The notes under the pieces are model-generated. The model worked only from the letters and a program-made list of their open reading frames with translations. It was not told where the DNA came from and made no database searches. A stretch of DNA of 62,119 nt from positions 28,975,890-29,038,008 of the forward strand of contig NC_058132.1 of NCBI RefSeq assembly GCF_016433145.1. The letters are read 5' to 3'. A program made the translations under genes and the position numbers. Shown here in pieces: positions 33,101-61,417 of the stretch. The stretch comes from Gracilinanus agilis. Lineage: Eukaryota. How positions within the stretch are numbered: the first letter of the stretch is position 1; each line of letters starts with the position of its first letter.

Positions 33101-33505
33101 CCATACACTGAAGCCCGAAGTAGTGCCCCAGATAGCCGGGAGCCCAGGAGCCTCTGGGACCAAGACAGAAGCTAGGTGATAAGAAGGAAAAACAGAATTA
33201 AAATTGGAAAATATTTTAGAATTCCCTTAGATACAGAAGTGCCTTAGAATGCCTTATATTAGAATTGAGGATACCTTAAATAATTCTTCCCATGGGGGTC
33301 AGGACTGGAGAATACTTACTGTTAACCCATAGGTGACCAGAGGAGGCCAAGCACAGAGCCGAAGCACCAACAAGGCCCGAACTAGTTCCCTTGTCTTTTT
33401 TAGACGAAAAGCTTCCCCATCAAACCGTAAAATTGGCCCCTGGGCTCCTGAACCTTGCAAAGGGGAGGTAACCCGAGATAGCAGTACTCGGCTGGTTCGG
33501 AGCAT
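30106..33505 (-). CDS. PRODH2: Hydroxyproline dehydrogenase (proline dehydrogenase 2), 10 coding exons
   Basis: Motifs ALLVLRLCAWPPLV, RASVYGQFVAGET, LMQLKVTALTS, VRLLVDAEYT, GVKLVRGAYL, LMVASHNEESVRQA, FGQLLGMCDHVSLALG and YKSIPYGSLEEVIPYLLRRAQENRSVL. Exons checked were open. Confidence 0.97.
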
Positions 33506-33669
33506 TCTGCCTGCCTTCTAAGTACCAGTCTCAAAGGAAGGGAACCTTAAGGCAATCAATGGGACCAAAAACCCACTTTCCCCGCCTTTTGGGTGGCATA
33601 TGACCAATTTACTTGGGGGGGGAACATAGCTAGGGTCAGTGGCTCCTTGGTGGGCGGGTAAGGGGATGG

Positions 33670-33702
33670 GTAACTCATTAACCAGACTTGGGGCAGAGTT
33701 CA
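33670..33702. promoter_or_regulatory. Adjacent HNF1-like and HNF4-like sites in the PRODH2 promoter
   Basis: GTAACTCATTAAC at 33670-33682 (reverse complement GTTAATGAGTTAC) and GGGGCAGAGTTCA at 33690-33702, ~170-200 nt upstream of the ATG. Confidence 0.55.
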
Positions 33703-34079
33703 GGTTTGGGATGGGGGGCAGGGGAGGAAACCTAGAATTATTAGGGGCTCTGAAAAGCATATTCCCAGATTTTTATACTGGATTGAGCTAGTATTGCAAG
33801 ATCATAGGACTAGAGAACAGGCCTAGAGCTAACCATATGCCCCATCTTTGCCCCAGTCTTACTTTTTAGGAAAGAGTGGCTTCAGTTTTGAGGAAAAACC
33901 CTTAATTCTGAACCATTCATAACAGTCTGTTCTCATCTTTAGTCACCTTGCTAAGTAAGTCAGTAAGAATGGTGGGGGAATGAAAAGCCTGGACCCCAAA
34001 TATTATGGTAGGAGAAAAAGAGGAAAAACAAACTCTACTCCTTCTGGCTGATATCAGGCCAAAGACTGTCACTATAGGG

Positions 34080-34286
34080 GTGTGTTGGCGAACCCATGGC
34101 ATGAGTGCCAGAGTGTGCTGGAGGGGGCTGCTCCCCTCCCCATCTCCCCATGCACTTGAGGACATTTCTCACATAACCGGCTCTCTGCCCAGCAGCCCAG
34201 TGGGAATGCTTCCTCCCTTAGGGGCTCACATGCAGCATGAGGGTTGCAGTTTGGGCATTTGGTCTCTAAAAAGTTTGCCATCACTG
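34080..34286. mobile_element. hAT MITE, 207 bp
   Basis: Degenerate left TIR GTGTGTTGGCGAACC and right TIR AAGTTTGCCATCACTG, with 8-bp TSD CTATAGGG (34072-34079 and 34287-34294). Confidence 0.85.
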
Positions 34287-36491
34287 CTATAGGGTCTCTG
34301 GCTGCGTTCACTGGGGAAGATGGAATCATGGAGAGGTAATTATGGGTTCAGATTGGGTTCCCAGCACTGTGATTTTGTAGTCTTGGGGCCAAGGGTCATA
34401 AGAGCTATTTGTGTGGGGTCCGGTGGGGCTTTATAGTGCTGCTTTGGTGGGGCCTTTGAGTACCTAATTACCATCCAGTGTGGGATGTGAGCTCCTGTGG
34501 TGGTACTGTGGAATCTCTAGACTTAGATTGGGTCACAGGAGCTCAACACAACATTTATCAAGAGCTTCCAGTGTATACTGAGGATACCAGGAAAGACGTT
34601 CCCTGTCCTTCATTCTACTAGGGGCAGGGGGTGAGAAAGAAACGTCAAATGTGTTCTAAATGGAAGACAAGCTGATTTGAGAAAGGGAAAGAAAACGAAC
34701 AGCTAAGGGTTGAGGATCAGAGAAATCCTCATCTAGGAAGCCTTAGCCTTACACCTTAGTGGAAAGGATTTCTGCAGATGGAGGGTCAGATTTTCCCTGG
34801 CCTAAGCAGGGAATTTAGGAAGGTGGGGATACTGTGGGTGTATGATGGAGTAATGCCTTCTTCCCAAAGTTTTGACTGGGAAGCCACTAGAAGAAAGAAA
34901 AATGTCTGACAGCGTACATTTCCCCAAACCCTTGGGTCTTTTCTTCCTTTCTCCTTGAAGAATCTTTCCACCATCCAATTTGGAGGGCAGAAGAAAAAAG
35001 CTATGTTCGGCCAATTAAGTCTTTTTTTTTTTTAAACCCCTACCTTCCGTCCTAGAATCAATAACTGTGAATTAGTTCCAAGGCAGAAAAGGGGTAAGGG
35101 CTAGGCAATTGGGGTTAAGTGATTTGCTCGGAGTCACAAAACTAGGAAGTGTCTGAGGCCAGATTTGAACCTGCACCACTTAACTCTTAACCAGCATCTT
35201 ATTTCCTTGTACAATAGTGTATGACCACATTGTGGATTGCCTGTACATTGGGAAATGGTGGTCAGAGGCAAAAGCCAAACCAAGATTTCTATAATTTTAT
35301 GTATGGGGAGGCGGGGGAGTAGTAAGGGGAGGAAGGCTCTTATGTTTTGCACGTGAGGCCACTCCAAAGTTTAAAAAGGCTTTTTTTTCTGCCCCAAACC
35401 CATCCAAATTACAAATGCTCAAATCTGAAATGTATTATTTCACAAGTGGACTAGAGGGACTAAGTCGATGAAGGAACTCCCGATCAGCCACCCGCTATAC
35501 TTGATATTTCAGAGCAATGCCCAACGTTCTGAAAACTGAATCGGGGCCAGCCCTGCACATCCAAGCCATGTATCTATTCAGAGTAGTCTGAGGGCTTGTA
35601 AGTCAGTGCCCTGGGAAAGGCAAGGAAGACCCTGCGGCCTTTGGCAAAGCCTGTCCATGCACACCAGATAATATGCGGATGAAAACACTTGACTGGATGA
35701 CTGAATGTGTTGCCATCTGGTTACTTAGCTAATAAAGTGAGAACCTGCTTCTCAGCATGCAGAAAGCAGAAAAGGAGCCAAGTATGGGCGGTTCTTTCTG
35801 TGGCAACACCTCGGCTGTCACGTGGAATACCCACCAAGGGCACAGACAGCCTGTGTCACGTAAGTCTATATATTTAGAACTGAAAAGCATCTTAGAAGTC
35901 TTCGGGCCCATTTCCTTCAATTGAATCCCATTACTGTATATTGTGGGGGGGTGGGCCAAGATCAAAGTGAAAGGATAGGACCTAAGGATGGAAGGGATGA
36001 GGATAATGATGGCAGAAAGAAAGCAGGGCTGATCATTTCTCATTTTGTTTTTCTCTGCAAAGGAGAGTGACTTTTATACTGGAAATGACAATACAAAAAG
36101 TGACTAACAGGGAGTTGATACACAAGACAAGTGAGGAGATAGCAAGATAGCACCTCGCTGCTCTCAGTGAGCTTAAATGAGGCTGGCACTGATGAATAGC
36201 ATCCCTGGGCTGTGAAAGGCCCAGAAAGTGTGATCATGGAGCCACTTTCAGTGATTTCAGTGATCTCTGCAAAATCATGAAAAATGGAAGAGTTACCTCC
36301 AAACTAATGGGCAAACGGCCTGACATCTACAAAGGGAAGAAAACAGAGTCTGCAGACTGTAGACTGGTAAACTTGACCTAGATCCCTGGGAAAATTCTAG
36401 AATGGATCATTAGAGATATGGATGGCAAACATCTAGAAAGGAAAATAGATTTACAAAGAACCAGTTTGGTTTCATCAAAAATCTATCATGC

Positions 36492-36629
36492 ACGGGGCAG
36501 CGGGTGGCTCACTGGATTGAGAGCCAGGCCTAGAGACAGGAAGTCCTAGGTTCAAATCTGGCCTCTGACACTTCCTAGCTATGTGACCCTGGGCAAGTCA
36601 CTTCACTCCCATTGCCTAACCCTTGCTGC

Positions 36630-36675
<46 letters not shown>

Positions 36676-36928
36676 TTTTAAACTCTTCTGTGTATTAGTT
36701 CCTTGGTGGAAGAGTGGTAAGGATAGGCAATGGGGGTCAAGTGACTTGCCCAGGGTCACACAGCTGGGAAGTGTCTCAGACCAAATTTGAACCTAGAACC
36801 TCCCGTCTCTAGGCCTGGCTCTCAATCCACTGAGCTACCCAGCTGCCCCATCCCTTTGCTGCTCTTTTGCCTTAAAACCAATACATAGTATTAGTTTTAA
36901 GACAGAAAGTATGAGTTAAAAAAAAAAC
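36492..36928. mobile_element. SINE (+) with a nested SINE1_Mdo-type copy (-, ~36668-36848)
   Basis: Head at 36492, tail at 36850-36928. The inner copy is flanked by duplicated TTGCTGCTCTTTT. Confidence 0.8.
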
Positions 36929-36949
36929 TTATCAAACTAAAAAATAGCT

Positions 36950-39048
36950 ATAGTCATATAAAAAAAAATGTGCCAAATCACTATGGATTAGAGAAGTACA
37001 AATTAAAACAACTCTGAGATACCACCTTATACCTACCTGATTGACTAACATGACCAAAAAAGAAAATAATGTTGAAAGGAATGTGAAAAAAAAGAATACA
37101 CTAATACACACTGTTGGTGGAACTGTGAACTGATAACAACCATTCTGGAGATCAATATGGAACCAGGCTCACAGGGCTACCCTTTGACCCATCTATATCA
37201 CTACTAGATCTATATCCCAAAGAGATCAGAGATAAGGGAAAAGAACCTATCTATCTGTACCAAAATAGTTTTAGCAACTCTTTTTCTAGTGACTAAGAAT
37301 GGGAAACTAAGAGGTTTTCAGCCATTTGAGGAATGGATGAACAAGTTGTGGTACTGGAATACTATTGCACTACATAAGGAACAATGAACAGAATGAGTTC
37401 AGAAAAACCTGGAGAGACTTATTTATATGAAGTGATGCAAAGTGAAGTGAGCACATCCAGGAGAACAATGTATACAATAATAGAAATACTATACAATGAG
37501 CAACTATGAAGAACTAAACCATTATCAGCAAAGCAAATCTCCAAGATAACCACAAGGGACACTTGAAGAAAATGTTCTCCATAGCCAAAGAAGCATGCCA
37601 TCTTGCTCTATATTTCCTTCATGAGATTTATATTTTATTGTGATATGTGGCTTCTATCATGACATGAGAAATACGGAAATATGTACTACATTATAATAGT
37701 TAAATTGGGATTTTGAATTAATAATAAGAGAGTTATAAAAAGTGGTCACCAATTATTAACCCTTAAGTCAGGAAAACTATTAGCAACTTTTAGCAATTTT
37801 ATTTAATTGGAATATTAGTAAAAAGAGGAAAATGTGGAAGGGAAAAGAGGTAAGGAGACTGCCTAGCCTACCCTAAATGCTGATCTCAGGAAATGAAGCT
37901 TGCTTGCAGACAGAGTTCCAATCTCCACATGGGAATCCTAGTCACTCACCAGCAAGCCCAGCAGGATCCAGGCAAGGTCCCAATGCAGAAAAACCCTTTG
38001 TAAGCTAAGCTCACTGAGGCAGCAGTGAACCCAACAAAGTTCCTGACTCCAAGAAGCTCCAAAGCCGAAAGTCAAAGTCCTGAAGCCGAAAACTCCAGTC
38101 AAAAGGCCCAAAGCTCCAAGTCGAAGTCAGAGTCCAAAAGCCCCAAGGAGCTGTCCTCCAAAGAAGAAGTCCAAAGGAGAAGATTCAAGAAGTCCTTTTG
38201 GCCAGGAAGTTCAGGACTTTTTATAGTCTTCCTGCCCCTTCTCATTTTATAGGAACCAATCACAGTCTTTCAATTTGCCTAGCACTGCTAGGTGTGGGGT
38301 GGTAGGGGGAGTCCCTCCCTGCAGTGGCCTCTGGAGTTGTCACCTACTCTAGCAAGTAACTTGTGAACTCTCAAACTTAGTGACTGGTAAGGTACTAAGA
38401 AGGGGTACTTAGTTTTTGATTGATTAACTTAAAAGTCACTAATTGATAGACAGAGTTTGATTCACTCTTCACAATCCTCCCTGTGATTCTTTGGGAGACT
38501 AGTCTCTCCAATGAATCATTTAACATATACATAACATAACATATATAACATAACAGCTTATCCCTCTAAAGATCTTCTAGCCAAAGGTTTATACAATATT
38601 GCACTTTCTAAGAGGAAATTACAATAATTGGAAATAAGAGGGAAATAAAAGAGAGAGCAAAACCAATGTTTGGTAGGTGCATTGACAAAAAGCCAAGTTT
38701 ACATTCAGAATAAATGTGTTCAACCCCCTTCAGTTCAATCAATTACATCCCAAAGTTCATTCTGGATCTTCTGATGCAGTGTAGATTTCTTTATGGCACT
38801 TTCTTCAAACAGTTCCCTTTCTTGATTCAAAAAGTTGATGAGCTGCTTTTCCTGAAATTTTTCTCAAAAAATTTTAAGTCTTGGATTTTATGAAAATTTT
38901 ACAACATGAAATTACAGATATAACATATATTATTCACTGACTGGGGAGAGGACAGGGGGAAGGAGAAAACTTGAATTCTAAAATGTCAAAAAACAATTGT
39001 CAAAAATTGTTTCTACATGTAACTTTTAAATATTGGAAGAAAAAAAAA
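36950..39048 (+). mobile_element. 5'-truncated L1 (ORF2 C-terminus, 3' UTR, poly-A) interrupted by an ERV fragment
   Basis: L1 ORF2 end (..AAATTAAAACAACTCTGAGATACCACC..) at 36950-37680 and 3' UTR/poly-A at ~38900-39048. Duplicated CTATCATGC at 36483-36491 and 39050-39058. Confidence 0.75.
37690..38900 (-). mobile_element. ERV 3' LTR (~37690-38473) with polypurine tract and adjacent internal sequence
   Basis: Minus strand reads PPT ..CACAGGGAGGAT followed by TGTGAAGAG.., with CCAAT and TATAAAA elements inside the LTR. Confidence 0.7.
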
Positions 39049-42000
39049 CCTATCATGCTAGACTACCTCATTTCCTTTTTGGAAAGGATGCTATAGGGTT
39101 GAGTTTACCTGGATTTCAGCAAAGCTTTTGAACAAGCATCTCATACTTGGGGAGAAGATGTAGAAATATGAATTAGATGATGACATTCAGATGGATGCAG
39201 AGTTGGTTGGATAGCTGGATTCCAAGAGTAATTATTATTCAATATCAGCACTGTAAGAAATCTCCAGTGAAGAACCCTAGGAATCTATACTTGATCCTGT
39301 GCTGTTTAACATGTTTACCACTAACTTGGACAAAAGTACAGATGATAGGCCTACTAGATTTGCAGATAACAAAGCTGGGAGGGATAACTAACACAGTGAC
39401 TGACAGAATCTGGATCCAAAAGAAACTTGATCAGCATTGGGCTGAATTGAACAAGATGAAGTTAAAGATATATTTAAAAGTCTTGTACTTGGGTACAATA
39501 ATATAAAATTAAAATTTAAGCAACCTCGCAAATAGAAGATGGGGAGACATGGAGAGATAGCTGTTCAGAAAAAAATTTGAGGGGATTTTTTTAAACCCTT
39601 TTGTCTTGGAATCAATACTGTGTATTGGGGCATTAAGTGACTTGCCCAGGATCACACAGCTCAGGAAATATCTGAGGCCAGATTTGAACCTAAGACCTCC
39701 TGTCTCTAAGCGTGGCTCTCCATCCACTGAGCTACTCAGCTGTCTCCTTGAGGGTTTTAATAGACTACAAAATCAGTACATGTTGGTTATGTGCTATGGT
39801 AGCCACGAAAAGACATGCAATCTTAGGCTGCATTAAGGGGGTGGGATATAGCTTCTAGGAATAGGGAAAAGCAACAACTGTGTTTGTTTTAGTCAGACCT
39901 GGTCCTAGAGTGTAATTATCAGAAGGGCTTTAAAAGTCCATGATTTATGAGATTTGGTTGATGGAACTGATAGCTGCCTTCAGTGTTAAGGGCTATCTTG
40001 TGGAGGGATTAGATTTGTTCCATTTTGCCACAGAGAGCAAAACCAGGATCAATGGATGGAAGCTGCAAAGCATCAAATTTAGATTTGATGCAGTATATTA
40101 AGCTCTGTGGTCTCACTCTTCCAGAGCTAGCTGACTACATCTCTTCCCTCAGAGTGTTGGGGGAATAGTTTCTAGACATAGCCCTAAGGGCTTAGGATGT
40201 CTCTTCTCTAATGTTATTGGCTAAAGCCCATACCTTGATGTGGTCCCCCATTGTTAGCCATCAGTTACCTGCATCCTAGTTCCATTTTTAATGAATTATC
40301 TCAAAAATTTAGCAAGAACAGAAGTACAAGCCATAATTTCTGGGCCCACTGGTTCGTTCCTCTACCACCTTGGTCTCTGAGTGAGTGGCTCAAACAATGC
40401 AGTTTCAGGCCTACTAAGTTGAGGTCTGAATTTATCATTGCTACTAAGTGAGTGTTAATGAAATGTTGGCCAACTTGAAATATTGCAGAGCTGGGTCTCA
40501 AAGGTTGCTTCTCTGAGTCTCATACTGACTACAAATCTCAGAATGGTCTCCACTCCTGAACCTGTTCCTAACTCACTCTCGTTACCTTTTGAGACAAGTT
40601 CATAGCCTCCAACCTTCTTTACCTAAAATTAAAAAATGGAGGCAAAGAAATGGCATGGGTGGAGAGGCATTATTTCTTAATACTTTCAGTTGAACTAAAA
40701 ATAGGTTTTTAATATCCTTCCATAGAACCAAAACCAGTATTCATGGACAACAGGTCAACATTGGCTAGGGAGAGCCCTTGGCATCAACCCTTCAAACGCT
40801 TTTCTCACTGGAGCTAGCAGGTTAGAAGGCAGAAAGAAGTGGGCTGAAGAAAAGAAATGAGTCCAACTAATCCATTTTAAATATATCCCCAGTTCTGTCT
40901 AGGAAGTTACAGCCAATTGAAGAGGCGCCCTTTCATCATGAGGTTAGCAGACCAGAACTAGTTATAGAATGTCTACACATGTTCCAAAGTCCATGTGGGA
41001 ATTATATCAGCTGAGCATTCTGTACATGCTTGTAAAGACTGGACTCATCAACCAATGGCCCATTACACTCGCCATTCCCTCTTAGCTTCATACTGGTTCA
41101 GAAGGAGAATCCCCTGATACAACAGGAGAAACAGATCAGCCTTCTTCTATATCACAAAAACAAAACAAAACAACAAAAACTTCCTGACAAATAGAGCTGT
41201 CCAAAAGTAGAATGGCTTACTTGAAGAAGTGGTGGCTTCCCCGGCCTTAAAAGTCTTCAAACGGAACTTAGACAACCACATGTCACATATGTTATAGTGT
41301 GTATTCTTTTCATGATGGACTAGATGGCCATCAAAGTCCCTTCCAACTCTCACATTCTGTGATTTCATACAAAGGAGAGACAGAAGCTAGCATGTGCCAG
41401 GCCAGTCAAACCCTGCCTACAACCTTGACCACCATCTTCCCTCAGACCCCAGGGGAAACAACCCAGAGCCCTGAGCCCCAAGACCCATTGGAAACAGCAT
41501 GGCTTCTAGTACAGTGCCTACAACCATCTTTCTAGGAAGCAACCCTATGGAGCTGAAGCCTGGCAGCCGCTTCTGTTTACAGATGCTAATGCCACAGCTA
41601 TTGAAGGCTGCAAGAAAAATTTTTGCCCAACAAAGTTCTTGACATTGCCAAATCAGAAATCAAATTTATCAAAAGTGACATTAAAGAAAAAGTATCATCT
41701 TATTTAATTGCCATTTTGCTGGTTCACCCCAAGGACCATGGGACCTTTCCTCCTGTCTTGCAGCCCAAACCTTCCATTTGTGTTATATGACCCATCAGAA
41801 AGTGAGCTCTGGTTCAAATCTGGCCTCAGACACTTCCTAGCTGTGTGACTCTGGGCAAGTCACTTAACCCCCTTTGCCTAGCCCATACCACTCTTTCTGC
41901 CTTGGAGCCAATACACAGTATCCAAGACGGAAGGCAAGAGTTTAAAAAAAAAAAAAAAAAGAAAAAGAAAAAGTGAGCTCCTTGAGGGCAGGGACTGTCT

Positions 42001-43219
42001 TTTTCTCAGTGTTATGCACAGTGCTTTGCACATTATAAGTGTTTAATAACTGCTTTCTAAGATTTATTTAATTGATTCATTCAATGTCACAGATAGTAAT
42101 GGTTGATCCAGAATTTGAAACTAGATCTTCTGACTCCAGGTAGAATAGTCTTTCCTATACCATATTACCCTACTTGAAATAATGCTAGAAAAATAGGCTC
42201 TAGCTAAACTGTGGAAAATCTTTAATGTCAATTTAAGGATTTTTTATCTTATCCTAGGGGCAATGGGAAAGACATCAAAATTTTTCTCTCAGCCTTGCTA
42301 TCCCCTCAAACTATATCTTCTCCTTTCATTGCCACTCTCAGGGGGGAATTTGTTTATATTCATCTTACTTTATTTCTTTACATTCTGCTCACTTCTTGAT
42401 CCTTTGCAAACTGGCCTTCAGAAAAGCAAATAGTGTCCTGGGCTTCTAGCCATGAAAACCTAAGTTAAAATCTAACTCCAGATACTTACTTGTTCTGTGA
42501 CTTTGAGCAAGTCACCTAACCTCAATTTTCTCAACTATAAAATGGGGATCAAAATGACACCTACCTTGAAGGATTGTTGTAAAGATCAAATGAGCTAATA
42601 TTTATTAGGGTTTTTTAAACATTAAAAAAAATTTTTTTCTTTGGTTACATGATTCACGTTATTTCCCTTCCCTCTTTTCTCCCTCCTCCCAGTGTTGACA
42701 AGCAATTCCACTGGTTTATATGTGTATTATTATATGTGTATTAAAAAGAAAAAAATTCTTTTTAAAAAGCTAAGCTTTTTGCTCAAAACCTATTTCCATA
42801 TTATTAATTTTTGTAATAAAATAAGCTTTTAAAACCAAAACCCTAAATCATATACCCACATAAACAAGTGATAAATCATGTTCTCTAACTGTGGATAGCG
42901 TTCTTTCTCATAAGTGTCAGAATTGTCCTGGATCAATGCATTGCTGTTAGTAGTAAAGTCTTTTACATTTGATTAGCCAACTGTTCCTGTTACTATGTAT
43001 AATGTTCTCCTGATTCTGCTTCTTTCACTCTGAATCAGTTCATGTAGGTCTTTCCAGTTCCTAAAGAAATCATCTGGTTCATCCTTCCTTATAGCACAAT
43101 CATATATCACCATCATATACCACAATTTGTTCAGCTATTCCCCAATCAAGGGACATCCCCTCAAATGAGCTAATATTTGTAAAGCACTTAGCAATACCTG
43201 GTACTTAATAAATGCTTAT

Positions 43220-44000
43220 TCCCTCCATCACCACTCAACTGAAATTTCTTAAAGTCCCTCATATTCTCCTAATTGTTTATTACAATGGCTTTTCTTAGTC
43301 CTCCTGCTTTTTTGGCCTCTCAACAGCATTTGATGCTGCTGACCAACCCTTCTTGGATATACTCCTAGGATTTTTTGAACATTGCTTTCTTTTGGTTTTA
43401 TTTTGCCTCTCCTTTTTATCCTTTTTGCTAGATCATCATTCATGTATTATTGCCTATAAATGGATGAGTCTAAGAACTCTTTCCTGATCCCCTTCTTCTC
43501 TCTCTCTCTCTCTATTCTTCCTTAGGATCACATTAGCTCTCATGGGTTCAGTTATCTCTATCCAGATGATTCCCAAATCTGCATATCCAGATCTTATCAT
43601 TCTCCTGTGTTCCCATCCCTCATAACTAGTTTCCTGTTTGGCATCTTCATTGAGATGTCCCATAGGCCTCTCAAAATCAGTGTATCCAAAATAGAATTCT
43701 TTATCTTTAATCTCTAAACTTACTCCTCGTCCTGTCTACCCTGTTTTTCTTGAAGGAACCACCATTTTTTAGGTCATGGAAACTTGACATAATCCTCAAC
43801 TCTTCCCTTTTCCTTAATTCCCATATCTAGTTTCTAAGTCCTAAGGACTCTACCTACACCACATATCTCTCATCATCCTCTCCTCAACTTGCACAACTAC
43901 CACCCTAATTCAGGTCTTCATCACCTGAACTGTAGCAAGAGCCTCCTAAATGATCTCTCTGCCTTCACTTTCTCACCTTTCCAAACTTCCATACAGCTGT
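43220..44000 (+). mobile_element. L2 LINE remnant
   Basis: Decayed RT motifs (..LSTAFDAADQP.., ..GFSY.LYPDDSQI..) and an L2-like 3' portion. Confidence 0.6.
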
Positions 44001-46689
44001 CAAATGTTTTTAGTTGATATTTTTTTCAGAATTTAAACATGTAGCACTTAGATTTATGCAAGCAGAAATCAAAAAGATTGTATATAAAAACGAGTATATA
44101 AAAAGTAGTAAAATTCTTTTTAAAAAGCTAAGCTTGGTGGACTAATTGCTCTCAATCAGTAATCACTTGCTTTTAAAAAAAAAGTACATAATAAATTCAA
44201 CGTTACTTTGCCAAAGCATGCTCCTTGAAATTTCCTTCCATTCTCTTTTGTGCATTAAAATATTTTAGGGGCACTCTTTTTTTATTGCTAGGATTGTTCC
44301 ATCCCATTTCCCCATTTTAAAATGGAGGGAAACCTTATAACAAAAAAGCATAGTCAAGCAAAACAAATTTACACTGTGACCATGTCTAAAATGTTAACTT
44401 GTATCTTTCTGAACATTATCAATAATCTCTGTCAAGAGGTAAGTAATATTCTCTAAATAACCTGAAGCCTCTAAGAGAAAACACAAGTTCCTCTCTTTGG
44501 CATTTAAATTCTTTCCCAATCTCCCACCTATTTTTCTACTCCAATTTTTTTTCAGACCCTCACCTTTCATCTTGAAATCAATACTATGTATTGGTTCCAA
44601 GGCAGAAGAGTGATAAAGGCTAGGCAAATGGAGGTTAAGTGACTTGCGCAGGGTCACACAGCTAGGAAGTATCTGAGGTCAAATTTGAATCCAGGACCTC
44701 CAATCTCTGGACCTGACTCTCAGTCCACTGAGCCACCTAGCTGCCCACTTTCTACACCAGTTTCATGTTATTCTTCCTTTCATTTATTCCTATACTCCAG
44801 AAAATTTGTCTTAGGTTCAGATAGTCAGAGATATTAATATAGGTTCTTTGGGCTACTAAAATTCTATTCCTTAGTTTCTTTCTTGTTTATTTTTTGGTTT
44901 GATTTATCTAGTTCTGAGAGGGGAAAGTTAATATTCCTTGCTAATATGTCTGTTTCCTCCTATAACTCATTTAACTTCTTTAGGAATTTGAATGCTATCT
45001 GGTTCATATATGTTTGGTTTTAATATTACTTCATTGTCTATTATATCTTTTTTCAAGATGAAATTGTCTTATCTCCTTAAATTAATGAAATTTTGCTTTT
45101 GCTTTGTCTGAGATCATAATTGCTACCCCTGTTTTTTTAACTTTGGCTGAAGCATCATATATTCTTGCACTAGCTCTTTACCTTTATTCTGTGTGTATCT
45201 CCCTGCTTTAAATGTGCTTTCTGTAGACAGCATGTTGTGGGATTCTAGCTGTTAATCCACTCTGCTATCCTTTTCTGTTTTATGCGTAAATTCATCCTAT
45301 TTACATTCACAGTTGTTATTACTATGTATTTCCCTCCAACTTATTTCTCTCCTGTTTATCTTCTTTCTTTTCTTTCAGCCTTTCTCTATTCACAAATTTC
45401 TTCCTTCTGGTTACTGACTACCCTAGTTCACCCTCCCTTTGGTCCATTCCCACCTTTCTTATTCCCTTCCCCCTCTTACTTCCCTATAGGGTACTGAGAG
45501 TGGACATTACTCCCATTTTGAGCCAATTCTGATGAGAAAGTTTCAAGCATTGCCCACTACCCCACCAATTTTCCTCTTCACTATATTGACTTTTAAACAC
45601 CTCATCATGAGAGATAATTTACTCCTATTTTCCTCTCCTTTTCTCTTTTCCCAATGTGTTCCTTTTTCTTATCCCCTAATTTTTTTATATTATCCCCTCA
45701 AAATCAGCTTACTGATATCTTTCCATATGTGTTCCTACTTGCTGCTTTAATAGTGATAAAATTCTTAAGTATATTCAGTATCTTCAGTGTCTTTTATCTT
45801 AAAAATCTTAATTATCACTTTCTTATGTAGTAATGTAATCAGTTTGATATCACTGATTCCCTGGAGTACCTCAAGTTCTTAAGTAGTTTAAGTATTTGAA
45901 GTATCTCTTTTATCATAGATATCTTAAGTATCCTGGTTAACACTTTGCCATGTAGGAATGTATTTAGTTTAATTCCCTTGAGTTCCTTGAGTTTTCTCTT
46001 CATTTATCTTTATGCTTCTTTTTTGGCTTCAAATTTTCTTTTCAGTTCTGGTCTTTTATCAGAAATACTTCGGGTCCTCTATTTCATTAAATATTCATTA
46101 TGCTCAGTTTTGCTAGGTAGCTGATTCTTGGTTGCAGTTGTAGATCTTTTGCCTTATAGATATCATATTTCTGCCTTCCAGGCTTTTAATATAGAAGCTG
46201 CTAGATCCTGTGTAATCGTAACTGTGGCTCAATAACATTTTAATTGTTGGGGGGATTTTTTTTTCTCCTTAGCTTGAAAGTTCTGAAATTTGGTTACAAT
46301 AATGCTGGAACTTTTAAATTTGGGATCTTTTTTCAGGAGGTAATCAGTAGATTCTTTCAATTTCTATTTTCTCCTTTTGTTCAAGAGCATCAGGGCAGAT
46401 CTCTCTGATAATTTCTTGTACTATATGGTGTTCAGGCTCTTTTTTAAATCATAGCCTTTTCTCCTGGAGCTATTTTCTAGGTCAGTTTTTTTCCAGTGAG
46501 AATTTCAGATTTTCTATTATTTTTCCATTCTTTTGAATTTGTTTTATTGTTTCCTGATGTCTTATGGCATCATTAGTTTCCATTTGTCCCATTCTAATTT
46601 TTAGTGAGTCATTTTTTTGCTTGAGGTTTTATACTTCCTTTTTGGGGGAGTTATTTTCTTTAGCAATTTTTTTTCTAGGTTTCAGTCTC

Positions 46690-47074
46690 ATTAACAGGGG
46701 GTCTGCCCAGAGACAGATAAAACCAGAGTGAAGTAATATAGCAAAGTATTATTTAGAGGAAAAGGGGGCAAAGGGAGATGGGAGGCCAATGGCAGTAGAA
46801 GGTGGGGGGAGGGGAGAGGGAGAATAAGGGGGAGGTGTAGGAAAAAGATCAATTCCAGCAAAGATGGCTGCAGAGCCTCCACTGAGTGGAGAAGGGGTCA
46901 GTCTCTTATAGTGTAGTTGTCTGGGATGATGTAACCTGGATTATCTCTCTTGGTTCAGATTGTGCTACTTGGATCCAGTCGTTGGATGATCCTGAGAAAG
47001 TTGGCTTTGTAGGTAGGGGCTTTTGGTTCCCAGGCTTGTGCAAAGTTGAGGGATAAGATTTTGGTGTTCTGCCA
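46690..47074 (-). mobile_element. Probable solo LTR inserted in L1 ORF1
   Basis: Non-L1 ~390-nt insert with a TATAAGA element and U5-like sequence. Boundaries are uncertain. Confidence 0.45.
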
Positions 47075-47160
47075 GGCAGTTGATATTTTCATTCCTTTCT
47101 CAGCTTTTCTTCTATTTCTCCTATTTGTTTTGTCATATTTTATAGCTCTTCCAGGAATTC

Positions 47161-49782
<2,622 letters not shown>

Positions 49783-50352
49783 TTATTGGAACCTTACCTA
49801 TATACTGAAACTCTGCTCCTAGGATGGAAGAAGTAGCATTGTAAGCTCACACTGTGGTCATTTCCAATGTCTGGGGTCCACCCAGCTGCATCTTGGGTCC
49901 TGTGGAGTGAGCACTCTGTGGGGCCAGGCCAGCTGGCCGCTGTAGGGAGGCCTGCAGGTTTTCCATCCAGATGCTACTTGAGCTAGATTGTGTTGGGTTC
50001 TGCGTTCTACAGCAGCAGCTGGACCCTGTTAGATTGCATTCCTTTCATTGCTGCCCTCATTGAGGGTTGAGTTAGAATCCACTACCCCTGAACTGTGCTG
50101 GGCTTCATTCCTCCCACCACTGCCCACACTGTATCAAGTTGCATTCTGCTCTCTCCTCCTGAGGCTAGGCTGAACCCAATTTTACTCCTTCCCAGTAGCT
50201 TGTACTGGATTGTGCCTGAGTTCCACCTTGGCAAACTTGACTTTGTTCTCCCCTCCTACCCCAGTGATGTGGGCTCTCCTTGCTATCCCTCTACACTGTT
50301 CTGGATAGAGAGCTCTACTTCACACTGTCTTCTGTGAGTCTCACTGCTCCAG

Positions 50353-50497
50353 NNNNNNNNNNNNNNNNNNNNNNNNNNNNNNNNNNNNNNNNNNNNNNNN
50401 NNNNNNNNNNNNNNNNNNNNNNNNNNNNNNNNNNNNNNNNNNNNNNNNNNNNNNNNNNNNNNNNNNNNNNNNNNNNNNNNNNNNNNNNNNNNNNNNN
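50353..50497. other. Assembly gap (145 N)
   Basis: Run of N; both flanks look like the 5' UTR of the same minus-strand L1. Confidence 0.99.
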
Positions 50498-50849
50498 GTG
50501 AGCTGGGAGCACTCCTTTTTCTGCCATTTTGACTCCCAGAAGGGGAATTTCCAATAGCTTAATTAGACTTCCAGCTTCCGGACTTTCCCTTTCTCAGCCA
50601 GTTTGCCTCCACATAAAGCATGAATATGACCCTATCACTCTCCAGCTCAAGAACCTTCAAGGGCACCTCAGTGTCTTTGACCCTTCACATCCTACCTGCC
50701 TTTGTAGGCTCATTGCACATTATTCCCCTTCACATGATTTTTGTGATAACTAAAATGGCATACTTACTGTTTTTCTGAACTCAGAATTCCTTCTCCTCCT
50801 TGCCTCCTGTAACAAATGAAATTCTCTGGGGAATATATATATATTTTTT

Positions 50850-51755
50850 TTAATTTAAATTTTGAATATTTTCCCATAGTTACATGTTTCATGTTCTTTC
50901 CCTCTCCCCCAAACCCCCCACCCCCATAGCTGACGCACAATTCCACTGGATTTTACATGTATCATTGATTAAGACCTAATTCTATATTATTGATAGTTGG
51001 ACTAGAGTTATCGTTTAGTGTCTACATCCCCAATAATATTCCCATCAGGCCACTGATCAAGCAGTTGTTTTTATTCTGTGTTTTTACTCCCACAGTTCTT
51101 CCTCTGAGTGTGGCTAGTTTGCTCTGGATCCTTGCATTGCTGCTAGTAGAAAAGTCTGTTATGTTCAGTTGTACCACAGTGTATCAGTCTCTGTGTTTAA
51201 GGTTCTCCTGGATCTACTCCTTTCACTCTGCATCAATTTCCTGGAGGTCATTCCAGTTCACATGGAATCCCTCCAGTTTATTATTCCTTTGAGCACAGTA
51301 GTATTCCATCATCAACAGGTACCACAATTTCTTCAGCCATTCCCCAATCGAAGGACATTCCCTCATTTTCCAATTTTTTGCCACCACAAAGTGCATGGCT
51401 ATAAATATTTTTGTACAAGTCTTTTTCCTTATGATCTCTTTGGGATATAAACCCAGCAGTGCTATGGCTGGATCAAAAGGCAGATAATCTTTTAGAGCTC
51501 TTTGGGCATAGTTCCAAATTACCATCCAGAATGTGGATCCATTCACAACTCCACCAGAAATGCATTAATATCCCAATTTTGCCACATCTCCTCCCACGTT
51601 CACCAGTTTCCTTTGCTGTCATGTTAGCTAATCTGCTAGGTGTGAGGTTGCTTTGATTTGCATTTCTCTAATTATAAGAGATTTAGAACACTTTTTCATG
51701 TGTTTGTTGATAATTTTGATTTCTTTATCTGAAAATTGCCTATTTGTGTCCCTTG
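50850..51755 (-). mobile_element. L1 3' fragment (ORF2 C-terminus and 3' UTR)
   Basis: ORF 51223-51546 contains LPFDPAIALLGLYPKE..CPSIGEWLKKLWY..MEYY, typical of the L1 ORF2 C-terminus. Confidence 0.9.
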
Positions 51756-51769
51756 CTGGGGGCTATATA

Positions 51770-52434
51770 TATTAAATGTAATTTCTTAATCAAACTCTCA
51801 AGAAAATCTAATTAGCCAATGGACTCTCTGAGTAGCCTTAACAGATATCACAGAACTTGAGTGGGACAGAAGGCAGGGGCCCAAAAAGAGAGATATGATC
51901 GAGAGTAGCCAAGCAGCAGGGCTGGGCCAGAGAGAGGAGCATGACTAACTAAGCAGCTAGGCTTGGGGAGAAAAGAGTAAGAATGTAGTCAGAAAACAGG
52001 GACAAAAGATACCTCCTTCCTCAAGTCTAGAGCATATCTTATATATACCTTGAGCCATCCTCATCCAGTCCCTCCCTAGGACATCCTATGAGGTTTCTGA
52101 TTGAAAGATAGCCACACAGGAAGTGGCCTCAGAGACCTTGGTTTCTCCCTCACCATTTCATCCCAGAAAGAAGCTACCAACCTCCTGCCATGTGACTAGA
52201 CTACCATGACTGCTAGAACTGACTGACTTCATTATTTAAGAGAGTTCTTGTTTACAGATACATAAGAAGCAGGTCTCCACCCTGTCTATAAAAGATCTTG
52301 GCAAAAGAAGGGACGGCCCAACCTAGTTTCGTAGTCTTGGGAAGAGGCTATTGAAGCTTTCAAATCAAACTATTCTTGGGGGCCAAAGGGGGAACCAATT
52401 CAGTATACCAATCCACTATTAAATGTCTGCAACA
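51770..52434 (-). mobile_element. Probable solo LTR
   Basis: Minus strand starts TGTTGCAG.. and contains TATA-like (TATATATAAG) and U5-like sequence. Confidence 0.55.
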
Positions 52435-52807
52435 CTTTAGCCCAGGCTGTCCCCCATGCCTGACATGCATGTCCTCCTCTCTTCTGTCTCTTAGAATGCT
52501 GAGTTTCCTTCAAGGCCCAGCTAATGAGTTTTTCCATCTCCTATGGAAAGCCTTTCCAGCCTCCTGGTGTGTTTCCCTCCTCAAATGGTCATGTACTGCA
52601 TATATCTTTCTGTCTACATGTTCTTTCCTCCTCAGGAATTAGTTTTGGGGTTTTGTCTTGGCATTCATATCACCTTTGTTTTTGTTACCCCTCCCATACT
52701 CTTTTATACCGCCCCTTTATGTGTTGTAAACTATCTTGCTTGTATTTGTGCCTTTAATGCTTAGCACAGTTCCTGGCACAGAGTAATTACTTTCTTTTTT
52801 TTTTTTT

Positions 52808-52980
52808 TAAACCCTTAACTTCTGTGTATTGGCTCCTAGGTGGAAGAGTGGTAAGGGTGGGCAATGGGGGTCAAGTGACTTGCCCAGGGTCACACAGCTG
52901 GGAAGTGTCTGAGGCCGGATTTGAACCCAAGACCACCCATCTCTAGGCCTGACTCTCAATCCACTGAGCTACCCAGCTGC
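52808..52980 (-). mobile_element. Young SINE1_Mdo-type SINE
   Basis: Near-consensus copy ending ..CACCTAGGAGCCAATACACAGAAGTTAAGGGTTTAAAAA. Confidence 0.9.
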
Positions 52981-55900
52981 ACCCCCCCCCCAGAGTAAAG
53001 TAATTACTTTCTAAATGCTTTTTTCTTTGATTTATTCATTTGAGTTAATTCAGAGCCTCTGTGGGGGGCACTCAGGGATATTTTTGTGGGATTCCCAGTG
53101 GGTTTACAAATATGTCACTCTGAAGGATTTAGGACTCTGCTATCCTAACAATGAATGTTATTCTTATAGGGTGTTTGAGCGCTGTTGGCTTAGTGTCATT
53201 TTGAGGTTTTAGTAGATTCATGGGAGTTATTGTGGCATTACTAGGTGCTTGCTAGACTATTATAGGAGATCTCTGGGACCAGATGGGGCTTCCTTTTCAA
53301 TTTCCTGGAAGGTTTCCAGGGGGTTCACAGATGAGTTCCCACTGGGAACCCACAGTTGCTTTGCTGACAGTCTATACCCCCTGCTCTCTGTGTTTGTTAT
53401 GATGGTATCTGTGGAATCCTTTTGGTCTCACATGGTTATATCATAAGTATTGCCACCAGCTGTGTGTTTTTGTGGATCCTCCCTGGTCCCAGGGGGGACT
53501 CACCCAGGGATCTTGTCTGTTCTAGCTCTGAATTCCAGCTAGACTATGGAAGTGATGGTGTGGGATATTTTTAGGGTAGGCTTCCTTAGGGCTCCCAGGT
53601 ATATTATTAGGTGTACCCTGACCTCAGATACCATTACAAGGTATTGTTATAGGATCGCTAGGCCTACGGAGGGCCCAAGGGGTAAAACTGGATGGTCTCC
53701 AGGTCACTTTCTGGGTTTAGGGGAGTTTTTCAAGGTTTTGGAGTTTCATCAATGTTAATCAATGAATGAATGAATGCTGTCTCTTGTCAGGCACTCTGCT
53801 TCCCCCTGCACCACATCCTATAATTCCTGGACCATATGCTGATGTCCCTTGTAAGGGATAAGCCTCTTCTGCTCTCATTTTAGCTCCCAGAGATTTACTC
53901 ACACAGTCACATACCCCCACTCAGATTCCTACCCCACCCCTCCATGCTTCCTAGCCAGGTTTTTAGCACCCTCTGTCGAGGGAGGACTGCTTTCAGAGGG
54001 AAGCCCAGCTTCCAGCTCTCTCTAACCTCGCGTTGCTTTCTTTTCTTTCCGTTCACCTGCTCCTCTTATACCTTGCCCCAGAATTCTCCGCTTCTTTTTA
54101 ATTCCTGTGTCTCCTTATCTCCTCTCTCTAGATCTCTCGAGGAGTCCTCACCTCCCTTCTCTTGCTTATGGCTTATAGTCCCCCAAGTCTCACTCCGTGG
54201 AGCCAGCCCTGGGAAATCGAGGGGATCCTGGGAGCCGGTGTATGAACTGTTCATCCATGACAATCCAAGAGTACAAGGGTGGAAGCTAGAGGAACCAGGG
54301 AGTTGGCAGTTTGGCTGAAGCAGATGGGAGGGCTGGGCACCCCCTCTGTCCTGGTAGGGTTTGTGGTGTGTCAGGTCACTGGGTGGCTATATACGGAGGA
54401 TCTTAGAAGCAGAAAAAAAGGTCTGGGGCCCTTGCCTTGCCTCTAGTTAGCATCAGACGTAGCCATGGCCCTTCCCTTCTTCTCCCCCTGCACTGTTATT
54501 TTCCCTCTCTGCCCAGCAACAGCTTATTTCCTGCCTTGGCTCCCCAGGGCCTCATCCCAGATGCTCCCTCTTTCCATCTCCATCGTGGGGGGGGGCAGGG
54601 AGTGAAAACATCGAGGGAAAACTGTTCACAAGTTTCCATTCCCTGTGCTGCCCTTCCCCCGCCCCACTAGCTCTAGAACCCAGGCATTCAGCCAGCTGTC
54701 TGGTAGCTGTTGATCCCCAAATCCTCAGGCAGCCTGGTGGGGGGGGGTACAGAGGTGGGCATCTGGATTGGTGGCTAAATCCAATGAAGTTGGGTGATTT
54801 AAGGCCAGATTTCTGACCCTACACGACATGTCATCCTCTCAGAGTTGAGCTTAAAGCATCTGCCCCCTTACCCCCACCCTGCCCCCGCCATTGCAATCCT
54901 CAGACATCCAGCTTCTCCTCTCGGGCCCTCTCCCCAGAAGGCCCCAGGTGGCCGCCTCCCCAGCCTCACACCCTTCCCCGCACGGTCGGAGGCATCCATC
55001 CCGCCCCTCCCGGCCCCTCTTCTTAGGGACCCAGGTGTCCGGTCTTCTGTGGGAAGGGGAGATTTCTCAGGGATCCGCTCCCTTCCCTCCCACCTGCCTG
55101 TCCCAGCTGCCCTAGACCCCTTTGGCCCTCGTGGGAACGCGCGGCTGGGACCCTCATTGAACCGTCAGGACAAGCTGCTCCGTTCCCAGCCTCCTAGTCC
55201 CCGGCCCCGCCTCCTTTTCTGGTGTCTCCCGGGTGACCAGAGAGGCAGTGAGGACCGAGGCAAGTGTGCAGGCTTCAATGCCTGGGAGCTTGCGGCGGAG
55301 GGGTGGGCGGTGGCCCCCAGAGCTCCGGGCGTGATACGGCGGCGGAAGGGTTGGTATTGCTTGGTTTGAGCAACTTTGTCTCATACAGCCCATAACTAGG
55401 CTGGGAACCCGGGGAGGGGGGGGGGCAGGATGCGGAGACGCCCCTTTGGCTGTCTCTTCAGCACCCCTCTCCCTCCGTCACTGACTCAGTTTCCCTCCCA
55501 AACCTCTGGCCCCGATCTGACCTTGTTCTTAGGCTAAAAATAGCCCTCCATCCCCAGGTCGGCAGCTCAGCTGGGACCCCTGAGGCCTGGGCCGTTTATA
55601 TCGTCTTTTCCACTTGGGGACCCGGGAGACTCGGCTTCCTCCCCCTAGGGCCGCGGCTGAGCGACTTTGTTCCACTGACTGAACGAACTCCCAGCCACAC
55701 CCCAACAGGGAGCCCCCAAACCCCCCCTCCCAGGCCAGACCCCCTGCGTCTGCCCCTTAGCCCACTGCCCTCCCTCCTCCCCTCCCGACAGGTGCCCCCC
55801 CCTTCCCAGCCCCCTCCCCGGTCTCATTCTCAGCCTAGGAAGGGTTTTCTCAATGAGGAGGGGCGGGCCCAGTTGGGGGCGGGGCGGGGGCGGGCTGCCC

Positions 55901-56114
55901 AAGTGTGTAGCCTGGCCCAACCCGGGGGGACTTGCGGAGCGGCAGGCTAGCGGAGAGACTGGAAGAAGCCGGAGCCCCGCTTCCAGGAGCTTGAGCCTGA
56001 GGGGTCCGGAGGGCCGCCTTGGGGGCGAAAGGAGCAGAAGGGGCGGGGCTCCAGAAGAGCTTTTTGTGGGGGACAGAAAGTTTGGGGAGTTGAGGAAGCC
56101 CCAAGCCGGCCAAG

Positions 56115-60909: not shown

Positions 60910-61417
60910 CCTGCTGCTCAGCCCGCCAGCCAAGGGAAGGCCTCTGGAAAGTCTCCAGTCTTCTTGGGTGATGAACTGGGCCACCAAGATTCCCCCCTCA
61001 AGAGAGCAAACCAAGTCTGGGAATGGGGAGGGAGGAGGGGAAAGACTTTGATGGACAGCTGACCCAGCAAATGGGAAAGGCTCAAGCCAAACCACGCCAA
61101 CAGGTCACTCCAGTCGAGAGAATTCAAAGTGGCAGGTGGGCTAGGACGGAACCCTGGTATACAGGGGACGGCATCGAGGATGGCATCGAGGGCACAGATA
61201 TCCAAAAGCAGAGCCAGGATGGCATGAAGACCGAGACTGCCTGGTGGGTGCTCAGTCTCATAGAAACGTGCCAACATGGCTTGGTGGGCCCAAGGTGGCC
61301 ACCTCACCTGCGGGGGAGGAGGGCACCTGGGGTGCGTTTCTCCAAGTGGCCCCATTGCCGAGGCAAATACGAATTGGGAAATGTGGGGTAGATGTCGGGG
61401 TTTGAATATTTATGTTT

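What the first reader, a model, noticed from the sequence alone, without database searches (positions are those of the whole stretch)
33506..56114. NPHS1 (nephrin) is missing from its conserved slot between PRODH2 and KIRREL2
In human and mouse, NPHS1 (29 exons, ~26 kb in human) lies here head-to-head with KIRREL2 on a shared promoter (established). I found no Ig- or FN3-coding exons or nephrin C-terminus on either strand; the interval is almost all TEs (seen). The single gap is only 145 N and is flanked by an L1 5' terminus (50537-50498) on one side and the L1 5' UTR leading to ORF1 on the other, so it looks internal to one L1 (inference). Nephrin has therefore been relocated or lost in this lineage, or two L1 copies were misjoined in the assembly. 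Nephrin is essential for the slit diaphragm in mouse and human. It has been reported absent from the chicken genome, so a mammalian loss or an uncoupling from KIRREL2 would be notable.
Basis: partly seen in the sequence, partly recalled or inferred. Interest (0 to 1): 0.82.

Follow-up and report, generated by a model that had tools for sequence, protein, structure and literature searches.

The report
Nephrin moved, not lost, in marsupials
The kidney-filter gene nephrin really is absent from the space between PRODH2 and KIRREL2 in this marsupial window, but it has not been lost: in marsupials it sits about 100 kb away between COX6B1 and UPK1A, so an ancient nephrin-KIRREL2 gene pair has been split by a rearrangement.

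Summary
PRODH2 (minus strand, ATG at 33505) and KIRREL2 (plus strand, ATG at 56116) lie head-to-head. The 22.6 kb between them has no nephrin exon by tblastn with 11 nephrins or by a nephrin profile over all six frames.

The alarming readings do not hold. Four marsupial orders have full-length nephrin genes (1236-1246 aa, 80-87% identical). In public assemblies the gene lies COX6B1 > NPHS1 > UPK1A:
- Devil has all three genes in 35 kb of gap-free sequence.
- Brushtail possum and bilby have COX6B1 > NPHS1.
- Opossum has NPHS1 > UPK1A.

So the scan had already found this on other DNA.

Outgroups:
- Platypus has KIRREL2 <> NPHS1 > UPK1A.
- Elephant and bat have KIRREL2 <> NPHS1, and sawfish has a KIRREL-family gene in that position.

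The nephrin-KIRREL2 pair is therefore ancient and marsupials broke it, probably by one inversion (inferred). Continuity across the 145-N gap could not be tested, but the conclusion does not depend on it.

This is a modest, apparently undescribed rearrangement.

The parts
30109..33505 (-). PRODH2 gene. The ATG is at 33505 and the last coding exon is near 30109-30363.
   Evidence: Exon translations. Pfam Pro_dh E 1e-17 and 9e-9.
33506..56115 (.). Head-to-head PRODH2-KIRREL2 spacer with no nephrin exon. Read as a rearrangement junction later filled by retroposed DNA.
   Evidence: tblastn. Nephrin HMM. Composition.
36494..36850 (.). Inverted pair of SINE copies. Other copies of the same family lie at 35022-35173, 39624-39748, 41809-41972, 44544-44746 and 52787-52985.
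   Evidence: the repeat finder families D1-D6 and I1-I9. Dispersed matches. Sub-threshold Rfam hairpin hits.
47163..49640 (-). RBBP4 processed pseudogene. It is intronless, frameshifted, and ends in AATAAA plus a short A run.
   Evidence: Pfam CAF1C_H4-bd 1.7e-16 and WD40. Pieces lie in different frames. 3' end.
49641..50537 (-). L1-like 5' UTR and start of ORF1, joined to the RBBP4 retrocopy. It contains the assembly gap. The L1 identity was not verified.
   Evidence: Sequence read on the minus strand. No in-session homologue. Atlas search uninformative.
50353..50497 (.). Assembly gap of 145 N. Continuity across it is unknown.
50865..51696 (-). L1 3' fragment with the ORF2 C-terminus at 51226-51564. 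A related fragment lies at 42496-43163.
   Evidence: ORF2 C-terminal motifs. Direct repeat D4.
55060..55211 (+). Conserved non-coding element about 1 kb upstream of KIRREL2. It stayed with KIRREL2 after the split.
   Evidence: 76% identity to bat L006:7413-7491 in the same orientation relative to KIRREL2, and to platypus L002:1882-1993 where it is inverted.
56116..60906 (+). Complete KIRREL2 gene.
   Evidence: Exon translations. ATG and splice donor. Pfam Ig hits. Colinear with bat KIRREL2.

Best explanation
NPHS1 is absent from this interval because in marsupials the gene lies roughly 100 kb away on the same chromosome. There it sits between COX6B1 and UPK1A, with all three genes on the same strand.

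The 22.6 kb between PRODH2 and KIRREL2 is the scar of that rearrangement. It is a junction between two genes that were not ancestral neighbours, later padded by SINEs, L1 pieces and an RBBP4 retrocopy.

Shown:
- The interval has no nephrin exon.
- Marsupial nephrin is intact.
- The order is COX6B1 > NPHS1 > UPK1A in four marsupial orders.
- A KIRREL-family gene lies head-to-head with NPHS1 in sawfish, platypus, elephant and bat; it was shown to be the KIRREL2 orthologue only in bat.
- UPK1A follows NPHS1 in platypus and echidna.
- The NPHS1-proximal promoter motif travels with NPHS1, and a conserved element about 1 kb upstream stays with KIRREL2.

Inferred:
- The mammalian ancestor was platypus-like, with UPK1A, NPHS1 and KIRREL2 adjacent.
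- The marsupial stem lineage inverted the block from PRODH2 to NPHS1. One break fell in the KIRREL2-NPHS1 spacer, between the two conserved elements. The other fell beside COX6B1.
- Eutherians independently inverted the same block without NPHS1.
For: Absence from the interval:
- tblastn and a nephrin HMM found nothing, with positive controls.
- The motif TGGCATGTGCTGACA is absent from the window.

Nephrin is intact in marsupials:
- Full-length models of 1236-1246 aa.
- 80-87% identity among four orders.

Gene order in marsupials:
- Devil: COX6B, NPHS1 and a tetraspanin all on the plus strand in 35 kb without any N. The tetraspanin is 66-81% identical to platypus uroplakin-1a.
- Opossum: NPHS1 followed by a tetraspanin.
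- Brushtail possum and bilby: COX6B followed by NPHS1.
- Same genome: scan note s1-176224 places NPHS1 after COX6B1, 88.6 kb before the window.

Outgroups:
- Platypus: KIRREL-type gene <> NPHS1 > UPK1A.
- Echidna: a fused nephrin-UPK1A gene model.
- Elephant, bat and sawfish: KIRREL-type gene <> NPHS1.
- The bat neighbour is the orthologue of the window's KIRREL2.

Conserved elements.
Against: - I could not read this genome's own DNA 88 kb upstream, so for this assembly the new position rests on an unchecked first-stage note plus other marsupial assemblies.
- The window's species is not known to me. It may or may not be one of the four sampled.
- PRODH2-KIRREL2 adjacency was not checked in another marsupial assembly, and continuity across the 145-N gap is untested.
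- The inversion scenario assumes that platypus PRODH2 lies beside COX6B1, which was not tested.
- The eutherian PRODH2-NPHS1 adjacency comes from general knowledge. The bat's 10 kb 3' flank held no PRODH2 exon.
- The KIRREL-type neighbours in platypus, elephant and sawfish are identified only by Pfam pattern, length (703-704 aa) and position.
Confidence: 0.8

Rival explanations
1. Assembly artefact. NPHS1 really lies between PRODH2 and KIRREL2 in this species. Either it is hidden in or beside the 145-N gap, or its contig was misplaced next to COX6B1.
For: There is a gap in the interval. Its flanks cannot be shown to be continuous. Older devil annotations carry truncated nephrin models of 752 and 846 aa, which shows this locus has been hard to assemble.
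Against: Four marsupial assemblies from four orders agree on COX6B1 > NPHS1 or NPHS1 > UPK1A, and the devil locus has no N over 35 kb. A 14-16 kb gene does not fit an estimated 145-nt gap inside L1-like sequence. No NPHS1 promoter motif or exon relic lies on either side of the gap.
Confidence: 0.03
2. Nephrin was lost in this lineage.
For: Only its absence from the interval.
Against: Full-length, conserved nephrin genes exist in devil, brushtail possum, opossum and bilby, with shorter isoform models for koala and wombat. All exons were recovered in the devil locus. The scan's own note reports NPHS1 in this same genome.
Confidence: 0.01
3. NPHS1 was relocated by another route than one inversion from a platypus-like ancestor. 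Examples are two successive inversions from a eutherian-like therian ancestor, or duplication of NPHS1 to the COX6B1 side followed by loss of the original copy.
For: The far side of the platypus arrangement is unknown. Cobra and sawfish have a different 3' neighbour, an ankyrin gene, so this region has been rearranged repeatedly. The conserved element upstream of KIRREL2 is locally inverted in platypus, which shows small extra events.
Against: NPHS1 > UPK1A, same strand and 2-7 kb apart, is shared by monotremes and marsupials. On the other routes that would be coincidence. No nephrin pseudo-exon remains in the interval, although more than 80 million years (my estimate, not tested) could have erased one.
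Confidence: 0.16

Closest known systems
Human and mouse NPHS1-KIRREL2 (nephrin-Neph3) head-to-head gene pair at 19q13.12
   Same: The genes are the same. The window's KIRREL2 is the orthologue of the gene that faces NPHS1 in bat. A conserved element about 1 kb upstream of KIRREL2 is retained. The pair is described as head-to-head and 5 kb apart, and is proposed to share regulation (PMC2736951). Both genes are reported to be driven by Ptf1a in the cerebellum (PMC3278613, citing Nishida 2010).
   Different: Here KIRREL2 faces PRODH2 across 22.6 kb, and NPHS1 is about 100 kb away behind COX6B1. The two genes cannot share a promoter region.
'Missing' nephrin of birds
   Same: An essential slit-diaphragm gene appears to be absent from its expected place in a genome assembly (PMC3278613).
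   Different: In chicken the gene was later found by RNA-seq in GC-rich sequence that had not been assembled (PMC5470226). Here the gene is assembled and annotated, but in a different place.
Evolutionary breakpoint regions and micro-inversions in mammalian chromosomes (general knowledge, not tested here)
   Same: The junction of two non-ancestral neighbours is enlarged and loaded with lineage-specific SINE, L1 and retrocopy insertions. Possible reuse of the COX6B1-side breakpoint in marsupials and eutherians is inferred.
   Different: The scale is small, a block of about 100-150 kb, and the break falls inside a bidirectional gene pair conserved since cartilaginous fishes.

Membership tests
NPHS1 (nephrin) gene in the interval 33506-56114 | Exons that encode nephrin's Ig C2-set domains, FN3 domain, transmembrane segment and tail | tested here: not met
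   tblastn with 11 nephrins gave a best E of 1.2. A nephrin HMM gave no hit at E 10, against 21 hits in the devil NPHS1 locus.
NPHS1 (nephrin) gene in the interval 33506-56114 | NPHS1-proximal promoter motif TGGCATGTGCTGACA, invariant in devil, bat, platypus and echidna | tested here: not met
   No match in the window at up to 2 mismatches. The motif itself is defined.
KIRREL2 (Neph3) | Ig-domain exons colinear with a eutherian KIRREL2, a signal-peptide first exon, and a C-terminal THV | tested here: met
   77-80% protein identity to the bat gene that lies head-to-head with NPHS1. Pfam Ig_3 and I-set hits. ATG at 56116 and an end of ...QTHV*.
PRODH2 | Proline dehydrogenase domain, with an N-terminal exon facing the interval | tested here: met
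   Pfam Pro_dh 1e-17. Exon 1 with its Met at 33505. The call as PRODH2 rather than PRODH rests on my recollection of the human protein and on synteny.
Marsupial arrangement COX6B1 > NPHS1 > UPK1A | NPHS1 flanked by a COX6B-domain gene of 86 aa upstream and by UPK1A downstream, all on one strand | tested here: met
   Devil, opossum, brushtail possum and bilby. For this genome the evidence is only scan note s1-176224.
Single inversion from a platypus-like ancestor | The outgroup has KIRREL2 <> NPHS1 > UPK1A, with PRODH2 beside COX6B1 at the other end of the block | tested here: inconclusive
   The first half is met in platypus and echidna.
Processed pseudogene (RBBP4) | Intronless copy of the mRNA with a poly(A) signal and tail, disabled frame, and target-site duplication | tested here: inconclusive
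   Colinear intronless RBBP4 pieces lie in several frames. AATAAA plus an A run is present. No target-site duplication was found.

The most novel reading that the evidence does not exclude
The nephrin-KIRREL2 bidirectional pair has been kept since cartilaginous fishes. It was split in the marsupial stem by one inversion whose COX6B1-side breakpoint was reused independently in eutherians. If so, marsupials are a natural experiment on this pair. Nephrin would work with only the proximal promoter that moved with it. KIRREL2 would work with the conserved upstream element it kept, so any regulation the two genes share, for example by Ptf1a or WT1/NF-kB, would not need them to be adjacent.
Probability: 0.45. 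Interest if true: 0.5.

Novelty: new member of a known kind. Interest (0 to 1): 0.35.

Why it matters
- It removes a false alarm. No mammal is shown here to lack nephrin, and the gap need not hide it.
- It corrects the idea of a 'conserved slot'. The pairing with KIRREL2 is ancient, but the PRODH2 side is not shared even by platypus. Marsupials and eutherians each appear to differ from a platypus-like order by a different inversion.
- For kidney, cerebellum and beta-cell biology, marsupials give a natural test of whether co-expression of nephrin and Neph3 depends on their shared intergenic region.
- It narrows the break to the stretch between two short conserved elements, which could guide enhancer dissection.
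- It is one more reminder that absence from the expected place is weak evidence of gene loss.

Tried and rejected
- No tool gave a nephrin sequence directly. Every sequence used afterwards was returned by a tool.
- The first full-length search listed only eutherians. An aberrant devil model then led to the marsupial nephrins.
- Two look-ups were lost on isoforms that are not on record.
- blastn between marsupial and platypus spacers found little beyond the two short elements.
- The ankyrin gene next to NPHS1 in cobra and sawfish matches nothing in the window, so it is not the TEX14-like gene. I think it resembles NFKBID, from memory only.
- The gap flanks have no homologue in the window or the fetched loci, and no target-site duplication was found. 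The Atlas search of the putative L1 ORF1 start was uninformative.
- Read laying on 55001-61000 with four RNA(?) runs of a related organism was dominated by an intronic SINE and gave no KIRREL2 exon coverage. It says nothing about expression.
- Rfam found only sub-threshold SINE hairpins.
- The scan's notes gave nothing by sequence or for UPK1A and KMT2B.
- The paper by Nishida et al. 2010 is not held.
- No paper in the library describes the marsupial position of NPHS1.
Full report
**Layout of the window**

PRODH2 lies on the minus strand from about 30.1 kb to its ATG at 33505. Its exon 1 translation carries the N-terminal PRODH2 motif, and two exons hit Pfam Pro_dh.

KIRREL2 is complete on the plus strand. 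A signal-peptide exon starts at the ATG at 56116, with a splice donor at 56167. Ig-domain exons follow, and the protein ends ...RLQTHV* at 60906.

The spacer is AT-rich (GC 0.34-0.47 from 34 to 54 kb) and CpG-poor. The last 2 kb before KIRREL2 are GC-rich. The only N run is 50353-50497.

**Is nephrin there?**

I had no nephrin sequence. One fragment then retrieved full-length nephrins, and further searches gave eutherian, marsupial, monotreme, fish and shark nephrins.

- tblastn of 7 and then 4 nephrins against the window gave nothing better than E 1.2 inside the interval. The same searches picked up the paralogous first Ig domain of KIRREL2 (E 1e-9 to 1e-14) and at least 18 exons in the devil NPHS1 locus.
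- A profile HMM of 13 nephrins was searched without filters against all 2431 stop-to-stop pieces of the window. It hit seven pieces, all in KIRREL2, and none in the interval even at E 10. It hit 21 pieces of the devil locus.

**What fills the interval**

- Several copies of one SINE family are present, plus two L1 3' fragments.
- An RBBP4 processed pseudogene lies on the minus strand at about 47163-49640. It hits Pfam CAF1C_H4-bd and WD40, has several frameshifts, and ends in AATAAA plus a short A run.
- The retrocopy is joined at its 5' side to a sequence that reads like an L1 5' UTR and ORF1 start (49641-50537). The gap lies in that stretch.
- With the DNA I hold, only about 14% of the interval can be shown to be dispersed repeat, and about 15% more is the retrocopy with its L1-like part. 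'Almost all TEs' is plausible but not verified.

**The gap**

Both flanks are non-coding and lie on the same strand of the L1-like 5' region, so there is no reading frame to keep. I found no other copy of these flanks in the window or in the fetched loci, and no target-site duplication that would tie the two sides to one insertion. An Atlas search of the putative ORF1 start was uninformative.

Continuity therefore remains unknown. The main conclusion does not depend on what the gap holds.

**Where nephrin is**

A first-stage note of this scan (s1-176224) says that in this same genome NPHS1 follows COX6B1 directly, 88,638 nt before the window's start. I could not read that DNA, so I tested the idea in public assemblies.

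| Species | Arrangement found |
|---|---|
| Tasmanian devil (GCA_048593225.1) | COX6B-domain gene of 86 aa, then NPHS1 (1242 aa, 15.4 kb), then a tetraspanin. All are on one strand, in 35 kb with no N. The tetraspanin is 66-81% identical to platypus uroplakin-1a. |
| Opossum | NPHS1 followed by a 269-aa tetraspanin |
| Brushtail possum | COX6B gene 8.5 kb upstream of NPHS1 |
| Bilby | COX6B gene about 8 kb upstream of NPHS1 |

The four marsupial nephrins are full length, 80-87% identical to one another and 61-63% identical to eutherian nephrins. Nephrin is therefore intact. Across the deepest splits of living marsupials it lies between COX6B1 and UPK1A.

The 88.6 kb between the noted NPHS1 and this window is compatible with the block from UPK1A to ARHGAP33, which is about 108 kb in human by my recollection of the map.

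**Polarity**

| Outgroup | Arrangement found |
|---|---|
| Elephant | KIRREL-type gene of 704 aa head-to-head with NPHS1, 3.5 kb away |
| Bat | KIRREL2 (703 aa) head-to-head with NPHS1, 3.5 kb away. It is the orthologue of the window's KIRREL2. |
| Sawfish | A 703-aa gene of the same type, in the same head-to-head position |
| Platypus | The 703-aa gene head-to-head with NPHS1. Uroplakin-1a lies 2 kb downstream of NPHS1 on the same strand. |
| Echidna | The longest 'nephrin' model (1463 aa) runs on into the tetraspanin, so the two genes abut there as well |

The KIRREL2-NPHS1 pairing is therefore ancestral and was lost in marsupials. The NPHS1 > UPK1A adjacency is shared by monotremes and marsupials and was lost in eutherians.

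In signed gene order, a platypus-like ancestor would read +COX6B1 +PRODH2 -(ARHGAP33...ZBTB32) -UPK1A -NPHS1 +KIRREL2.

- Inverting PRODH2 through NPHS1 gives the marsupial order.
- Inverting PRODH2 through UPK1A gives the human order.

The left half of that ancestral order is an assumption that I could not test. The human order itself comes from general knowledge.

**Where the break fell**

- A 150-nt element about 1 kb upstream of KIRREL2 (window 55060-55211) is conserved with bat, in the same orientation relative to KIRREL2. It is also conserved with platypus, where it is locally inverted. It carries CACCTG and CAGCTG boxes and two TGGGAA/TTCCCA motifs. That it is a PTF1/RBPJ-type site is my inference. 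Ptf1a is reported to drive both genes (PMC3278613, citing Nishida 2010, which is not held).
- A 15-nt motif 250-400 nt upstream of NPHS1 is invariant in devil, bat, platypus and echidna. It is absent from the window.

The break therefore lies between these two elements. Each gene kept its proximal control region.

**Literature**

The head-to-head pair, 5 kb apart, is described for human, and shared regulation has been proposed (PMC2736951). Nephrin and Neph3 were reported missing from the chicken genome (PMC3278613). Chicken nephrin was later found by RNA-seq in poorly assembled GC-rich DNA (PMC5470226). I found no paper on the marsupial position of NPHS1, although it is implicit in public annotation.

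**Verdict**

Loss is wrong, a misjoin is unnecessary, and relocation is right. This is an ordinary kind of event, a small evolutionary rearrangement. It has one interesting consequence: a gene pair kept since sharks is uncoupled in marsupials.

Interest is modest at 0.35. I put the relocation itself at about 0.95 and the single-inversion history at about 0.55. The overall confidence of 0.8 reflects both.

Noticed in passing
window 47163-50537 (minus strand): An RBBP4 processed pseudogene is joined at its 5' end to an L1-like 5' UTR and ORF1 start, and one open frame runs from the L1-like start into the RBBP4 N-terminus. This may be an L1/mRNA template-switch chimera. No target-site duplication was found.
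   Followed up: partly
window 55060-55211; L006 7413-7491; L002 1882-1993: A conserved non-coding element lies about 1 kb upstream of KIRREL2 in marsupial, bat and platypus, and is inverted in platypus. It has E-boxes and paired TGGGAA motifs. Contigs from RNA(?) runs of a related species cover 55072-55542 at about 95% identity.
   Followed up: partly
L001 9726-9751; L006 9587-9609; L002 9756-9775; L005 9793-9812: The motif TGGCATGTGCTGACA, followed by GGGGA, is invariant 250-400 nt upstream of NPHS1 in devil, bat, platypus and echidna. It is a candidate core element of the nephrin promoter.
   Followed up: partly
L005 10001-29552 (echidna): The longest RefSeq 'nephrin' isoforms (1463 and 1452 aa) fuse nephrin to uroplakin-1a, and 'nephrin isoform X4' (253 aa) is simply UPK1A. 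This is either read-through or an annotation merge.
   Followed up: partly
nephrin C-terminal tails (P0280, P0281, P0283, P0298, P0296): The middle YDEV motif of the nephrin tail (human Tyr1193 by my recollection) is not conserved in marsupials or platypus. The first and third YDxV motifs are largely kept, though platypus reads YAEV at the first.
   Followed up: no
P0023 (752 aa) and P0282 (846 aa), Sarcophilus: Older devil annotations carry truncated or mis-spliced nephrin models. This suggests the locus was incomplete in earlier assemblies.
   Followed up: no
window 36502-36840: Two SINE copies in inverted orientation (88% complementary arms) give sub-threshold Rfam matches to plant miRNA precursor families. 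It is a SINE hairpin, not a miRNA gene.
   Followed up: partly
window 58200-58600 (KIRREL2 intron): A SINE copy attracts enormous contig depth from RNA runs of a related organism and swamps any read-laying on this gene.
   Followed up: no
L003 79517-84882 (cobra); L004 56611-57783 (sawfish): In cobra and sawfish the 3' neighbour of NPHS1 is an ankyrin-repeat gene on the opposite strand. It looks NFKBID-like from memory only, and it is not UPK1A or PRODH2.
   Followed up: partly
Brushtail possum NPHS1 locus (no DNA returned): A 1692-aa product with no Pfam hit is called on the opposite strand across the whole COX6B1-NPHS1 region in the brushtail possum annotation.
   Followed up: no
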